A stretch of 63,971 nt of DNA, filler included, from Octopus bimaculoides (Eukaryota), in the NCBI RefSeq assembly GCF_001194135.2. It is 3 parts of 3 records of this genome, joined end to end, with 100 filler letters (N's around TTAATTAATTAA, not from the genome) between each part and the next. Parts side by side here need not be neighbours in the genome. Positions count along the whole stretch, not along the records: positions 1 to 31,912 come from NC_068989.1; 2 more parts are not named here. One strand, written 5' to 3'. The notes beneath the pieces are model-generated. The model was not told the origin of the DNA and ran no database searches. It was given only the letters and a program-made list of their open reading frames with translations. Both the position numbers and the translations under genes were made by a program. Positions 24,816-31,912 of the stretch are shown here, piece after piece; the first letter of the stretch is position 1, and each line of letters opens with the position of its first letter.

Positions 24816-25490
24816 AACGGAGCGAAGCAACTCGTGATAACTCAAGCAGTTAGGGAATGGACATCTACAGATATAATCACAAGCAGTCAGCCACCTAAAA
24901 GACAACACGACCAAAGGGAGAAAGAAGTTTACAACCAGCCAACTATGAGACACAGCTTCCCTCGACGCTATAACTATCACTAGCTCTCATCTCTTTACTC
25001 GGTAACCTTACCCTGGCTTTTTATCGGTTTACTACTACAAGAATGTGTACACACCTATACAGGCCAAAATTCTTTACCTTGCATGCTTTACGTACAAACT
25101 GTTATACGATTACACTGGCCTACCCGTTGTGGTATGGCAACATATAAAGTAACGGAGCGAAGCAACTCGTGATAACTCAAGCAGTTAGGGAATGGACATC
25201 TACAGATATAATCACAAGCAGTCAGCCACCTAAAAGACAACACGACCAAAGGGAGAAAGAAGTTTACAACCAGCCAACTATGAGACACAGCTTCCCTCGA
25301 CGCTATAACTATCACTAGCTCTCATCTCTTTACTCGGTAACCTTACCCTGGCTTTTTATCGGTTTACTACTACAAGAATGTGTACACACCTATACAGGCC
25401 AAAATTCTTTACCTTGCATGCTTTACGTACAAACTGTTATACGATTACACTGGCCTACCCGTCGTGGTATGGCAACATATAAAGTAACGG
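24816..25490 (+). repeat. Near-perfect 335-bp direct tandem duplication inside an LTR-like element
   Basis: aacggagcgaagcaactcgtg... starts at 24816 and again at 25151; I saw only one difference (cccgttg versus cccgtcg). The element ends ccgttaca at 25654. Confidence 0.92.
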
Positions 25491-26131
25491 TAAATAAATA
25501 TTTCTTAAAAACTTTATGAATTGTTCGTCTTGTGCATCCTGCAGCACATCGCTACAAACTAACAATTATCGTTACAATTGGTAATCTCTGACTTAAACAT
25601 ATCGATACCGTTACAATTGGTGACCCTTCCGACTCCAATAACCTTACCGTTACATATATATATATACAAAGACAGAACACATCTGTGGCTGAATAAATGA
25701 AATGCATAACAATGCTATGTATTTAAACATACAAATACAGGGATTGCTTCAATTTTCGTGTTCAGCAACAGTTGATGTGCTTAATAATTAATCAAATTTA
25801 ACAATTTCACATATGGCAATGCTCACAAAAAGGAAAAAATATTTTAAAATTACGTCACTGAATCCATGATAAACATTTAAACACATATATGCACACACTA
25901 AATTTTTGTAAGTAAACAGGCACAAAAACAGCTATCTGATTAAGCTCGCTACATAAAAATGTAGTTCTGGGTTCAGTCGTACTGTGGGAGCACCTTGGGC
26001 AAGTGCTTATGACTATAAACCCCAAGTCAGCCAATGTTTTGGAAGGCGTCTTGGCAGACAGAGAAACGGAAGAAGATTGTCGTGTGACTATACACACACA
26101 CACACACACAGATTTGACTATACATACACAC

Positions 26132-26625
26132 AGACAACATTATATGAAATATCATTGTCATAAAGGGGAGAGTGATAACATATTCAAGTCAGAAAATATT
26201 ATATGAAATATTGTTGTCATACAAGGGGGAATAGTTACATATTCAAGCCAGAAGACATTATATGAAATATCATAGTCATACAGGGGGGAGTGATAACATA
26301 TTCAAGTCAGAAAAGATTATATGAAATATTGTCGTCATAAAGGGGGGAATGATGACATATTCAAGTCAGAAAATATTATATGAAATGTTGTCATACAAGG
26401 GGGAATTGTTACATATTCAAGCCAGAAGACATTATACGAAATATCATAGTCATACAGGGGGGAGTGATAACATATTCAAGTCAGAAAATATTATATGAAA
26501 TATTGTCGTCATACAGGGAGGAATGGTGACATATTCAAGTCAGAAAATATTATATGAAATATTGTTGTCATACAGGGGGGAATATTAACATATTCAAGTC
26601 AGAAAACATTATATGAAATATTGTA
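26132..26625. repeat. Minisatellite of about 59-60 bp units, about 8 copies
   Basis: Unit ...acatattcaagtcagaaaatattatatgaaatattgtcgtcatacagggggga... repeats along lines 26101-26581. Confidence 0.95.
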
Positions 26626-26806
26626 GGCATAAATGTCGAGAATAGCAGGGCCGTTGTTAAGCCCCTGCAACCTCTGCGTTCGCAGTGAACGACGTGGTTT
26701 TGGGGCCCGTGTTAAGATCAAAGTATATAGATGAGCTATCTATTCACTTTGGTGAAGATGTTAACTGAAAATTTCAAGCTTGATTAGGTAACAGGTAACC
26801 GATTCT

Positions 26807-28977: not shown

Positions 28978-29378
28978 TTGGGTTGTCCGGAAAGTTCCGT
29001 GCCGATTTATAGTAGCTTACCTTTCCACTTATTTTAGAACATGGTTGAGTCCATAAAATAGGATTTGACTACACCTCCATTTAGAGCACAGTTCAAGCTA
29101 TCTTTTCGTGGAAGAAGGTTTATGTTCCTATAACCTGTGTTAATTTTGTAACCCTTTAAAATGGAAGATAAGAAAGTTCATTTTCGGCACTTAATGCTTT
29201 TCTTTTTCCGGAAAGGGAAAAATGCCTCACAAGCAACCAAAGAAACATGCGCAGTTTACAGTGATGTTTCTTTATCCGAAAGAACTGTACGGAAATGGTT
29301 CGCAAGATTCCAAGCTGGAGATTGTAGCCTTATTGATAAAGAGCGAACAGGCAAACCAACCACTACAGATGATGACCA
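28978..29378 (+). mobile_element. mariner transposon 5' part (TIR plus N-terminal HTH of the transposase), 3'-truncated
   Basis: TA at 28976-28977 then TIR ttgggttgtccggaaag. ORF 29161 MEDKKVHFRHLMLFFFRKGKNASQA...SERTVRKWFARF..GD.SL.D.ERTGKP is a typical mariner N-terminus. Confidence 0.92.
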
Positions 29379-29381
29379 CGG

Positions 29382-30031
29382 TCGATAGCAGATTTGTTCC
29401 ATGTTTCGACAATTCAAGGAACAACATCGTTTCCTTTTCAGAATTTGGTTAATGTAGAAATAGGTTTAATCAAAGAACCTAACTTCACATTGGAGACTCT
29501 GCAAACATTCAAAAAACTAGCAGAAGGCATTGACACTGAGGTTGCTGTTAAATTTAAACACGACCAAACAGTACATCGTACACCATTGATTATAACATCA
29601 AATCTAAGATTTGGTCAGAATGCACCAGCTTCAGAAAAAGAAAACAGCATTTATAATGAGATACACAGAATTTCTTTTCAACACTGCAGGTCCTAAACTA
29701 AAAAACATTAAGAAAAAAATAAATCCTAACATTTGGAATTATCTTTTCTATGAACATTGGTTTTATAATATTGTAGAAGAGTCGGGATCATCGTCTCCCT
29801 GTCTTAGACGAATACGAATGTCTTGAAAGAGAGCGATTCACCCCTACAGGACGAAACAGATTTAGGTTTCCGTCTCCTTGTAGAAGCGGGGAGACTCTCG
29901 ACATCGAACCAAGCAAAGACGAAAGTAACAAAGAAAACGAAGAAGAGGAGATAGAAAAGAATGCAGGTGGAGAAAATACTCCAAATTCCTCAAGTCCGAC
30001 AAGTATGCTCAGTCACCAACAAAAATACTAG
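29382..30031 (+). pseudogene. NS1: Endogenous parvoviral element: densovirus-like NS1 SF3-helicase C-terminal half with two frameshifts
   Basis: SIADLF..SFPFQNLVN..IGLIKEP (Walker B, E>K), FKKLAEGIDTEVAVK (motif B-prime K-x4-G-x7-K), RTPLIITSN (motif C); then frameshifted TAFIMRYTEFLF...PKL...KKINPNIWNYLF; then an acidic tail ending TAG at 30029-30031. Confidence 0.88.
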
Positions 30032-30174
30032 AGATGCCTTCTCCTTCTGAGCAGTCGCAAGAATTTTAATATTTTTTTTTTTAATTTGCATGTCTTTAAT
30101 TATATAATTTGTAATTAATATTTCTTCTGAATAAATTGTAATTATCTGTCAATAAATAAATAATAATAAAAAAA

Positions 30175-31912
30175 GAGCAGTCAAAAAAAGAACAAAATAA
30201 CACCAAAGGAAGTCCGTTGAGGTTGGTGGTTTTGTTTTCTTTAGAGCTGGGTGGAATTTGTCAGAGAATAATTGTTTGTTTGCCGATAAATTTCGCCCAG
30301 CTTCGAGGCAATTCTGCCTGCTGTTTGTTGTGTAGTTATCGTTTCACTGCAAAAGAATTATTACTGGTTTTGAAAATTACCAATTTGAAGAAGGAATTGT
30401 TTGTTTAGCAAGCTGCAACGGAGCCAAGTTCAATTTAGGCCGGAGTACCATTGTGGCCTGGGATTTTTCTTCTGCCTGGAACTGTTCATTTTTGTTGTAC
30501 TCTTTGTGAACTGTTGTTTTTTCTTTTTTGTACAAATCATTTATTTTTATTTCTTCCGTTTTCATTGAACAGTTTTTCTAATTTTCCTGTGTTCAGAACC
30601 TTTTGGTTGGTGTTATTTTATTTTATGTGAACATTTTTCATGGCAGAGGAATAAGAAAGAAAAAAAGAAAAGGACACCACTTTGGAGTGGGAAGACCTTG
30701 AGGGGAGGACGGTGGTGTTAGGGACCTATTCGCTGTCACCTGATGCCATCGCCCTCTTCGATACAGATGTGATAGAAAAAGGGCTGGCAAGGTGTTTGCC
30801 AGCTAAAAAAATATTTTATAACAAGGGGTGTCAAGTACNNNNNNNNNNNNNNNNNNNNNNNNNNNNNNNNNNNNNNNNNNNNNNNNNNNNNNNNNNNNNN
30901 NNNNNNNNNNNNNNNNNNNNNNNNNNNNNNNNNNNNNNNNNNNNNNNNNNNNNNNNNNNNNNNNNNNNNNNNNNNNNNNNNNNNNNNNNNNNNNNNNNNN
31001 NNNNNNNNNNNNNNNNNNNNNNNNNNNNNNNNNNNNNNNNNNNNNNNNNNNNNNNNNNNNNNNNNNNNNNNNNCAGCTGGGAGGGTGCAAGGGCGACTTT
31101 GACCCTATGGACCCCAGTGGCCGCAGGGAAAATGACTTTCTCAGACTTTTTGAAAACGGCAGGCTTCAGGTATCCAGTGATACTGGAGGGTGGGCCACCC
31201 CCCACCCCAAGTGTCACTCGTGCCTGGAGTTGGACCACATCAAAAAGGATTGCCCAAGGAGCTGTGGTAAGGCCCCGGACCAGGGAAAGGTAAAGGAACA
31301 CTCCATTCTCCCTCTGCAGAGAAAGGCGGAGGAGGAGGTTGTTGAGGAGTCAACCTCAACAAAAAGAAAAAGGAAGGTGAGCAACTACCATTGCTCACCA
31401 GACGATGTGCAGGCTGCAGGAGAGGAGAAGGACCCCCCACCCCGGGTGTGCTGGTGGAGGCCCCAAATCCTGCAACCGGGAAAAGAAAAATGGAAGACGG
31501 TCGGCGGATGTTGATGTGCCGCCAATTGAATCCGAAGCTCTTCTGGTGGGAACTGTGCCACTGACAGAGCAGGTTGGGGTCCCTCCCTGTGAGATGAGGG
31601 TGGAATTGGTCATTTTCTACCTCAGGAAGGGACCTGTATAGAGGTTCTTGGACTGTCTTTTGGGCCGAGAGCCGTATAAATCAGTCTGTATAGACAGTTC
31701 ATGTTGGTCTCCTCAGGTGGCTGCAGAGGTCATCTCTCAAAAGGAATTAATGGAGGTCAGGAAGACCTGCAACAGTGAGGATTTCGTTTCCCTCCATCTG
31801 GGCCTGCCAACGCAGGATTTCCTGTAGGTGGCAGGAATCTTGCTTGGGAGCCTGGATGAGGAAGATCGAAGAAAAATTGAACTTTTGAATTTCTGTGAAA
31901 TTTTTAATTGTT
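30175..31912 (+). mobile_element. Non-LTR retrotransposon (L1/Tx1-like) 5' region and ORF1 with a CCHC zinc knuckle
   Basis: ATG near 30640 and EGRTVVLG...; after the gap, YPVILEGGPP plus a frameshift into KCHSCLELDHIKKDCP (C-x2-C-x4-H-x4-C), then a basic KRKRK stretch. No ORF2 is visible before the spacer. Confidence 0.75.

What the first reader, a model, noticed from the sequence alone, without database searches (positions are those of the whole stretch)
29382..30031. Endogenous parvovirus (densovirus-like) NS1 helicase fossil in a probable cephalopod genome
Seen: in one frame SIADLFHVSTIQGTTSFPFQNLVNVEIGLIKEPNFTLETLQTFKKLAEGIDTEVAVKFKHDQTVHRTPLIITSN. After a shift in an A-run (about 29635-29645): TAFIMRYTEFLFNTAGPKLKNIKKKINPNIWNYLF. 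After a second shift (about 29795): an acidic, Ser/Pro-rich tail to TAG at 30031. Known: FPF-hhhhEEP (Walker B), K-x4-G-x7-K (B-prime), P-hhh-TSN (motif C) and a downstream arginine finger are the ordered signatures of parvoviral NS1/Rep SF3 helicases. Inferred: germline integration of an invertebrate parvovirus, possibly a lineage with no described exogenous member. The AAA codon replacing the first Walker B Glu and the frameshifts indicate it is no longer a functional protein; it could still be a piRNA source. I cannot say whether this locus has been reported before.
Basis: partly seen in the sequence, partly recalled or inferred. Interest (0 to 1): 0.9.

Follow-up and report, generated by a model that had tools for sequence, protein, structure and literature searches.

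The report
Dead parvovirus NS1 fragment in octopus-like DNA
This is a real but broken leftover of a parvovirus replication gene (NS1 helicase) stuck in what is most likely an octopus chromosome; it belongs to a family of such leftovers first listed for Octopus bimaculoides in 2016, so it is a further example, not a new kind of thing.

Summary
Window 29379-30069 (+) is the C-terminal ~40% of a parvoviral NS1/Rep gene. Its first open stretch passes Pfam Parvo_NS1 (23.7 bits, cut-off 20). It is 72-84% identical to NS1-like proteins of Octopus vulgaris and O. bimaculoides. The copy is dead: about 60% of the gene is missing at the 5' end (nuclease domain and Walker A), and it has three frameshifts, not two. 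One near-invariant motif residue is changed. There are no premature stops inside the homologous stretches. The gene ends at 30069, not at the TAG at 30031. A truncated mariner transposon abuts its 5' edge.

Downstream lie a 3' non-coding region shared with other copies (TATA-like motif, AATAAA signals, an A-rich block) and a decayed hairpin. I read the hairpin as a remnant of the viral right telomere, which would mean DNA-level integration rather than an mRNA retrocopy.

'Densovirus-like' is not supported. The octopus copies, tubeworm copies and one unnamed 4-kb virus-like metagenome scaffold form their own clade (98-99% bootstrap). That clade is 25-33% identical to both chapparvovirus-type and 'densovirus' NS1.

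The family was already reported (François et al. 2016, O. bimaculoides KOF81493). This is a new member of a known kind.

The parts
29379..30069 (+). Remnant of a parvoviral NS1/Rep gene, given as one broken gene. It corresponds to residues ~328-547 of the intact 547-aa relative P0166: the SF3 helicase from just after Walker A (Walker B, B', motif C, arginine finger) plus the acidic Ser/Pro-rich C-terminal tail and the native stop. Breaks: 5' truncation (about 60% of the coding sequence missing, including the nuclease domain and Walker A); 3 frameshifts; 0 premature stops inside the homologous stretches; 1 substitution at a nearly invariant motif residue.
   Evidence: Pfam Parvo_NS1 E 2.7e-5, above gathering. 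AAV2 Rep40 alignment in register. Four colinear stop-free stretches match P0166 residues 328-424, 413-466, 466-523 and 523-540. Overall spans. 72-84% aa identity to octopus copies.
30070..30192 (+). 3' non-coding region of the element. It holds an invariant TATA-like motif ATTATATAATTTGTAAT (30099-30115), AATAAA signals (30130-30170) and an A-rich block (30165-30192) shared with another copy.
   Evidence: The motif is invariant in five copies (window, L003, L004, L001, L009). The block 30165-30192 aligns to L009 1365-1391; 0 of 500 shuffles reach the score. The same AATAAATAAATAA signal sits at the right end of the virus-like scaffold L006.
30187..30242 (+). Decayed hairpin directly after the A-rich block. 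Putative remnant of the viral right-end terminal hairpin (inferred).
   Evidence: DNA fold -9.5 kcal/mol, z -1.25, so weak on its own. A hairpin at the same position in L009 (-25.6 kcal/mol, z -8.5) and L001 (-14.1 kcal/mol, z -4.5) has different stem sequences. L006 has a T-shaped terminal hairpin (z -5.2).
28978..29378 (+). Neighbour, not part of the element: the 5' ~400 bp of a mariner (Mos1-type) transposon (putative terminal inverted repeat, 5' UTR, first ~72 codons of the transposase). It is cut off exactly where NS1 homology begins.
   Evidence: The ORF 29161-29388 hits HTH_48 (HTH domain in Mos1 transposase), E 4.1e-21. No second terminal repeat anywhere in the window. The terminal-repeat assignment rests on position and general knowledge, not on a test.

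Best explanation
An endogenous parvoviral element: a germline-integrated, now dead, 3' fragment of the NS1/Rep gene of an unclassified invertebrate parvovirus lineage, sitting in a repeat-rich, most likely octopod, chromosome.

Shown:
- It encodes the SF3-helicase part of NS1 from just after Walker A to the native stop.
- It lacks the nuclease domain and Walker A, carries three frameshifts and one change at a near-invariant motif residue, and so cannot make a working protein.
- It is one of several non-orthologous copies in octopus genomes.
- The copies differ mostly at synonymous sites. They therefore diverged while the gene was under selection, meaning as different virus strains or as still-functional copies. 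They did not arise by copying a dead pseudogene.

Inferred:
- The piece entered as viral DNA that included the right end of the genome. NS1 is followed by a shared 3' non-coding region, poly(A) signals and a hairpin at the place where related virus-like contigs have their terminus.
- The left junction was made by non-homologous joining inside NS1, next to or into a mariner copy.
- It has no present function. At most it could be a source of small RNAs, which was not tested.
For: - Pfam Parvo_NS1 above gathering; AAV2 Rep40 alignment in motif register.
- Exhaustive profile search: 173 hits, the closest E 2e-44.
- The closest proteins are O. bimaculoides A0A0L8GWZ8 and an O. vulgaris protein named 'nonstructural' on a 119-Mb chromosome.
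- The flanks of the O. vulgaris locus do not match the window.
- The intact relative P0166 folds like AAV2 Rep68 over both domains. All 50 best BFVD hits are parvoviral NS proteins.
- Piecewise colinear homology in four frames' worth of stretches.
- pN 0.14-0.17 against pS 0.77-0.91 versus three other copies.
- Shared 3' non-coding motifs and positional hairpins.
- NS1 is the terminus-proximal gene in the related scaffolds L006 and L012/L013.
- No VP-like or further NS1-like sequence in the window.
- Host-type surroundings: microsatellites, satellites, a mariner fragment.
Against: - The host species was not identified directly. No ORF of the window is on record in the gene index.
- The two junctions rest on a draft assembly with N gaps and cannot be checked without reads.
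- The window's own hairpin is not significant by itself (z -1.25), and the hairpins of the three copies are not alignable in sequence. The 'telomere remnant' reading is therefore an inference from position.
- One paralogue (O. vulgaris L003) ends in an A10 run and is flanked by a 67-nt direct repeat. That would fit a different insertion route.
Confidence: 0.9

Rival explanations
1. Processed retrocopy. A polyadenylated NS1 transcript (viral, or from an expressed older copy) was reverse-transcribed and inserted by a host LINE, which would explain the 5' truncation and the A-rich 3' end.
For: The copy is 5'-truncated. AATAAA signals are followed by an A-rich run at 30165-30205. The O. vulgaris paralogue ends in A10 and is flanked by a 67-nt direct repeat, 62 of 67 identical.
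Against: The window's A-rich run is shared, interruptions included, with copy L009 (0 of 500 shuffles), so it is element sequence and not a tail. A hairpin follows it 30-85 nt beyond the poly(A) signals. No target-site duplication is present: the local alignment score equals the shuffle mean.
Confidence: 0.15
2. Assembly artefact or contamination. DNA of an exogenous parvovirus present in the sequenced tissue was wrongly joined to host contigs.
For: The assembly is a draft with many N gaps. The junction with the mariner fragment is abrupt. A virus-like relative exists in public metagenome data.
Against: The gene is truncated and frameshifted three times, which a replicating virus could not tolerate. 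There are no N gaps at either junction. Comparable copies lie inside a chromosome-level O. vulgaris assembly.
Confidence: 0.04
3. It is not parvoviral. The fragment would come from another SF3-helicase carrier (papillomavirus or polyomavirus-like, CRESS or Polinton-associated, or a cellular ATPase).
For: Weak secondary Pfam hit to the papillomavirus E1 helicase (E 0.056 for the fragment). E1 structures are nearly as close as Rep40 for the helicase domain alone.
Against: Parvo_NS1 is the only family above its cut-off. Full-length relatives score Parvo_NS1 1.4e-18 against E1 3e-13. They align to AAV2 Rep68 over about 450 columns, nuclease domain included. All 50 best BFVD matches are parvoviral NS proteins. 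A clade member sits beside a PLA2-bearing capsid gene and a terminal hairpin.
Confidence: 0.01
4. This copy is a domesticated host gene or exon that still makes a useful protein.
For: Some paralogues have long open frames: 246-287 aa gene models in O. bimaculoides and O. vulgaris, and a 547-aa intact ORF in SRR11869390/94. Non-synonymous divergence is low.
Against: In this copy three frameshifts split the region, Walker A is absent, and no start codon or upstream exon is evident. The low pN/pS is measured between copies and reflects pre-integration history.
Confidence: 0.02

Closest known systems
Parvovirus-related sequence of Octopus bimaculoides, KOF81493 / UniProt A0A0L8GWZ8 (François et al. 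2016, Sci Rep 6:30880, PMC5013282)
   Same: Same NS1 family. 78% aa identity to the window's first stretch over 83% of it. It was reported as endogenised (WGS match) and aligned next to Lamellibrachia sequences, the same grouping I recover.
   Different: That copy keeps Walker A and an open 246-aa frame. The window copy starts after Walker A, is frameshifted, and is a different locus or a different species' copy. The paper does not describe this locus, the 3' non-coding region or the hairpin.
Octopus vulgaris gene model named 'nonstructural' (P0190) at OX597822.1:9.51 Mb, assembly GCA_951406725.2
   Same: 80% aa and 72% nt identity. The same TATA-like motif and AATAAA lie after the stop.
   Different: It is not orthologous, since the flanks are unrelated. 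It holds almost the whole NS1 (P0166 residues 39-530). It ends in A10 and is flanked by a 67-nt direct repeat.
Chapparvovirus-derived endogenous parvoviral elements of arthropods and fish (Pénzes et al. 2019, PMC6631224)
   Same: Same kind of object: fragmentary, frameshifted rep-derived EPVs from independent germline integrations. The named viruses nearest to the window in the profile search are of this type.
   Different: That study found none in molluscs. The octopus clade is separate and only 25-33% identical in the helicase core. A clade member has a PLA2-bearing VP. According to PMC11357303, the shrimp genera Hepanhamaparvovirus and Penstylhamaparvovirus and the unassigned Metalloincertoparvovirus lack that domain.
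AAV2 Rep40/Rep68 (PDB 1s9h, 9bc5, 9rm5)
   Same: Same SF3 helicase fold and motif order. This is the best solved-structure match of the intact relative, covering nuclease and helicase domains.
   Different: About 16-20% identity. A vertebrate dependoparvovirus with a different genome layout.
Unnamed 4017-bp metagenome scaffold L006 (ENA ERZ23499376, XUSH22-1 SAMN16869661, scaffold_6736)
   Same: Its NS1 (P0009) falls in the octopus and tubeworm clade with 98-99% bootstrap and is 49% identical in the helicase core. NS1 is followed by the same AATAAATAAATAA signal at the genome end.
   Different: Complete open NS1 (593 aa) and VP (525 aa, PLA2), and a terminal T-shaped hairpin. It looks like a free virus genome, not a fossil.

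Membership tests
Parvoviridae NS1/Rep (Pfam PF01057, SF3 helicase) | Profile match above the curated threshold | tested here: met
   23.7 bits against a cut-off of 20, E 2.7e-5, for the first stretch as it stands. Relatives score 57-67 bits.
Parvoviridae NS1/Rep (Pfam PF01057, SF3 helicase) | Ordered Walker B, B', motif C and arginine finger | tested here: met
   In register with AAV2 Rep40. All 13 of the conserved family columns that the window covers are present, and 12 are kept.
Parvoviridae NS1/Rep (Pfam PF01057, SF3 helicase) | Walker A (P-loop) | tested here: not met
   Absent from the window. Homology begins just after it, at the mariner junction. It is present in relatives. The absence comes from truncation, not from a different family.
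Parvoviridae NS1/Rep (Pfam PF01057, SF3 helicase) | N-terminal HUH-type nuclease (origin-binding) domain | tested here: not met
   No homology upstream of 29379 or elsewhere in the window. The intact relative P0166 aligns to AAV2 Rep68 across both domains.
Endogenous viral element | Viral sequence contiguous with host sequence on one contig | tested here: met
   A mariner fragment directly upstream. Microsatellites and satellites throughout. No N at the junctions. This depends on the assembly being right.
Endogenous viral element | Loss of coding capacity | tested here: met
   5' truncation and 3 frameshifts.
Endogenous viral element | Read support for the junctions; the same locus in other individuals or species | not testable with these tools
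   No reads and no searchable cephalopod genome collection. The one O. vulgaris locus fetched is not orthologous.
Densovirinae | NS1 groups with named members of the subfamily | tested here: inconclusive
   One 'uncultured densovirus' NS1 is 33% identical in the core and does not join the clade; deep nodes have 0-14% support. In BFVD, ambidensovirus and hamaparvovirus-type NS1 tie at about 1e-19, behind unclassified 'parvoviridae sp.'. No ICTV reference set was available.
Hamaparvovirinae / Hamavirinae (chapparvovirus-type) | NS1 groups with named members | tested here: not met
   The named members form other clades. Identity is 25-33%. The octopus, tubeworm and L006 clade has 98-99% NJ bootstrap. 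This is a rough neighbour-joining tree, not ML.
LINE-mediated processed retrocopy | Poly(A) tail at the 3' end and flanking target-site duplication | tested here: not met
   The A-rich run is shared element sequence. No duplication is present.

The most novel reading that the evidence does not exclude
The octopus fossils, the tubeworm fossils and the 4-kb scaffold L006 may represent an unnamed parvovirus lineage of lophotrochozoans at genus or subfamily level. In this reading NS1, not VP, is the gene next to the right telomere (VP-then-NS1 in L006; divergent genes in the sister scaffolds L012/L013), and the capsid protein carries a PLA2 domain. The window fossil, with NS1 stop, short non-coding region, poly(A) signals and hairpin, would then be an independent record of that unusual genome layout, and the lineage would still be circulating.
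Probability: 0.3. Interest if true: 0.6.

Novelty: new member of a known kind. Interest (0 to 1): 0.35.

Why it matters
As a single locus it matters little. It is one more degraded parvoviral fossil, in a host where the family was listed in 2016 and where gene models already carry names such as 'nonstructural' and 'SF3 helicase domain-containing protein'.

Its value is as a data point for three things.
- Octopods were repeatedly colonised by a parvovirus lineage that has no named member.
- Saturated synonymous differences between copies point to several separate integrations.
- The preserved 3' end (shared non-coding motifs plus a hairpin) hints at the genome layout of the source virus. It links the fossils to a virus-like metagenome scaffold that could be a living relative.

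For annotation, it warns that short 'helicase' hits of this kind in cephalopod assemblies are viral fossils, not host genes.

Tried and rejected
- Structure prediction of the 104-aa fragment alone gave a useless model (pLDDT 42), so no fold search was made with it. The intact relative P0166 was modelled instead.
- My first working idea was a poly(A)-tailed retrocopy. I dropped it for this locus after finding that the A-rich block is shared with L009 and is followed by a hairpin, and that there is no target-site duplication.
- A mariner insertion into a longer EVE is rejected. There is no NS1 homology upstream of the mariner end and no second terminal repeat.
- A search for VP remnants with the VP of L006 found nothing in the window or in other loci.
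- A 28-aa match to the Walker A region at 6190-6273 (E 0.12) has no supporting neighbours and is treated as chance.
- A possible second hairpin-like repeat at 30603-30680 is about what chance gives in AT-rich sequence, so it was not used.
- PHROGs gave nothing and Rfam gave nothing.
- Exact look-up of two window ORFs to identify the assembly failed.
- A single-sequence search with P0166 returned only family members and no named virus.
- The literature searches for octopus or cephalopod parvoviral EVEs returned nothing specific. The 2016 paper was then opened directly by DOI.
- Pfam scans of neighbouring ORFs were empty, apart from a weak zinc knuckle.

Full report
**1. What is there**

The window is draft eukaryotic DNA with 30-45% G+C. 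It has many TG/CA and AT microsatellites, satellites and N gaps.

The first stretch, taken as it stands (104 aa), hits Pfam Parvo_NS1 at E 2.7e-5. The score is 23.7 bits against a gathering score of 20, over profile positions 148-208 of 271. The papillomavirus E1 helicase is far below its cut-off. Against the PDB the only sensible matches are AAV2 Rep40/Rep68. They are weak (E 0.2) but in exact motif register.

**2. Relatives**

The word-indexed protein search found two close relatives from Logan assemblies, at 72% and 78% identity. An exhaustive HMMER search with a profile of these three found 173 proteins at E<=1e-3 and eight at E<=1e-30.

- P0003 is UniProt A0A0L8GWZ8, 'SF3 helicase domain-containing protein' of Octopus bimaculoides.
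- P0190 is an NCBI protein named 'nonstructural' of Octopus vulgaris. It lies on the 119-Mb chromosome OX597822.1 and is 80% identical.
- P0166 is an intact 547-aa NS1 ORF on 2.1-kb contigs of SRR11869390/94.

These relatives carry a Walker A motif immediately before the point where the window's homology starts.

The AlphaFold model of P0166 has mean pLDDT 74, and above 90 in the helicase. It matches AAV2 Rep68 over about 450 columns, covering nuclease and helicase domains, and also matches B19 NS1. Its 50 best BFVD matches are all parvoviral non-structural proteins.

**3. Extent and state of the copy**

I compared the stop-free stretches separately, as they stand, and joined nothing. They match successive parts of P0166: residues 328-424 (76% identity), 413-466 (54%), 466-523 (40%) and 523-540 (50%, E 3.6e-4). 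The last match covers a C-terminal motif that is also visible in copy L009.

The remnant therefore spans 29379-30069 and ends at the gene's own stop. Its damage is:

- the first ~60% of the gene is lost (nuclease domain, Walker A);
- three frameshifts;
- no premature stop within the homologous stretches;
- one change among the 13 invariant or near-invariant helicase columns that the window covers.

No other NS1-like or VP-like sequence is in the window. A 28-aa hit at 6190-6273 is at chance level.

**4. Surroundings**

Directly upstream, the ORF at 29161-29388 is the HTH_48 domain of a Mos1-type mariner transposase (E 4.1e-21). With a putative terminal repeat at 28978, about 400 bp of the transposon's 5' part are present. 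It stops within a few bases of where NS1 begins. There is no second terminal repeat in the window and no NS1 homology upstream of the mariner. So the transposon did not simply insert into a longer fossil. The two are joined by a non-homologous junction, or by an assembly error, which cannot be excluded without reads.

**5. The 3' end**

After the stop, five copies share an invariant TATA-like motif, at window 30099-30115. AATAAA signals follow.

I first read the A-rich run after them as a poly(A) tail. The O. vulgaris paralogue does end in A10 and is flanked by a 67-nt direct repeat, 62 of 67 identical. In the window, however, the evidence goes the other way:

- The A-rich block 30165-30192 is shared with copy L009, interruptions included (0 of 500 shuffles).
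- There is no target-site duplication.
- A hairpin follows immediately. It is strong in L009 (-25.6 kcal/mol, z -8.5) and L001 (-14.1, z -4.5), and decayed in the window (30187-30242, -9.5, z -1.25). The stems differ in sequence between copies.

The related virus-like scaffold L006 has a T-shaped terminal hairpin at one end. At the other end its NS1 is followed by the same AATAAATAAATAA signal. In the sister scaffolds L012/L013 the 3' end of NS1 also faces the contig end.

My reading, which is an inference, is that the window keeps the right end of the viral genome, including part of its telomere. That implies integration of viral DNA rather than of an mRNA copy.

**6. One integration or several?**

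The O. vulgaris locus has unrelated flanks. I compared the window's first stretch with three other copies. Non-synonymous differences are 0.14-0.17 per site, while synonymous differences are 0.77-0.91 per site, which is saturated. Copies of a dead pseudogene would show similar values at both kinds of site. The copies therefore diverged under selection on the protein. The most plausible setting is as different virus strains before separate integrations.

**7. Which parvovirus?**

All named viral hits of the profile search are of chapparvovirus, chaphamaparvovirus or ichthamaparvovirus type, at 30-45% identity over the core. The profile used in that search included such sequences, so this ranking is biased towards them.

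In a neighbour-joining tree of the helicase core, 116 to 164 non-redundant sequences with 300 bootstraps, one clade stands out. It holds the octopus copies, copies from the tubeworm Lamellibrachia and related ENA contigs, and the NS1 of L006. Its support is 98-99%, and no named virus is inside it. Deeper nodes are unresolved.

Core identity to P0166 is 25-33% for the named chapparvovirus-type proteins and 33% for an 'uncultured densovirus'. In BFVD the three best matches are unclassified 'parvoviridae sp.' from bird faeces. Ambidensovirus, ichthamaparvovirus and IHHNV tie behind them.

The VP of L006 carries a PLA2 domain (E 2.4e-12). The subfamily is therefore open. 'Densovirus-like' is not supported, and neither is membership of the chapparvovirus group.

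**8. Prior knowledge**

François et al. 2016 (PMC5013282) screened transcriptomes and genomes for parvovirus-related sequences. They list Octopus bimaculoides KOF81493 with a 100% WGS match and align it next to Lamellibrachia sequences. [quoted passage not shown] KOF81493 is the family of P0003.

Pénzes et al. 2019 found chapparvovirus-derived elements only in arthropods and fish. I found no paper in the held library describing this locus, the 3' non-coding region or the hairpin. A silent library is not proof of absence.

**9. Verdict**

It is wrong or unproven on several details: densovirus affinity, the number of frame changes, the end of the gene, and novelty. This is a new member of a known kind, of moderate to low interest. 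A side lead is the unnamed lophotrochozoan-associated lineage and its unusual gene order.

Noticed in passing
L003 9258-9325 and 10938-11005 (O. vulgaris OX597822.1, about 9.51 Mb): The near-full-length NS1 fossil of O. vulgaris starts about 36 codons into the gene and ends in AATAAA plus A10. It is flanked by a 67-nt direct repeat, 62 of 67 identical. This looks like a long target-site duplication and suggests a different insertion route from the window copy.
   Followed up: partly
L006 1-4017 (ENA ERZ23499376, scaffold_6736): Virus-like 4-kb scaffold. It has a T-shaped terminal hairpin (1-87), a tandem 14-mer (176-203), a 525-aa PLA2-bearing VP-like ORF (464-2041), then a 593-aa NS1 (2172-3953) on the same strand, with poly(A) signals at the very end. 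VP before NS1 is the reverse of the usual monosense parvovirus order, as far as I know.
   Followed up: partly
L012 and L013 (ENA ERZ4903303 and ERZ23487698, about 6.1-6.2 kb): Sister-group scaffolds with a 744-aa NS1 on the + strand. Two ORFs of 404 and 423 aa lie on the - strand upstream of it. The genes therefore diverge from the middle, and the 3' end of NS1 faces the contig end.
   Followed up: no
L004 397-2040 and L005 370-2013 (Logan SRR11869390 and SRR11869394): Fully open 547-aa NS1 ORF with nuclease and all helicase motifs, 79% identical to the window fragment. It comes from the same run series as degraded copies (L001, L002, L009-L011). It could be an intact endogenous copy or a circulating virus. 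The organism of these runs could not be looked up.
   Followed up: partly
window 28978-29378: 5' part of a Mos1-type mariner (HTH_48, E 4e-21), cut off exactly at the NS1 junction. The rest of the transposon is not in the window.
   Followed up: yes
window 24816-25490: Two tandem copies of a 335-bp unit, 99% identical. This is either a very recent duplication or an assembly duplication.
   Followed up: no
window 26131-26633: Satellite with a 59-bp unit (8.6 copies, 82%) and a higher-order 174-bp period (91%).
   Followed up: no
window 30682-31511, with an N gap at about 30839-31079: A G+C-richer stretch with open frames on the + strand. After the gap there is a 144-aa stretch with a weak CCHC zinc knuckle (E 0.008, below cut-off). 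It is probably the gag-like ORF of a retroelement.
   Followed up: partly
P0012, P0013, P0015, P0233-P0235 (Lamellibrachia satsuma KAI0231278.1; ENA contigs of 51 kb to 1 Mb): Tubeworm genomes carry several NS1-like genes of the same clade (43-49% core identity), some 500-775 aa long. The lineage is therefore shared by molluscs and annelids.
   Followed up: partly
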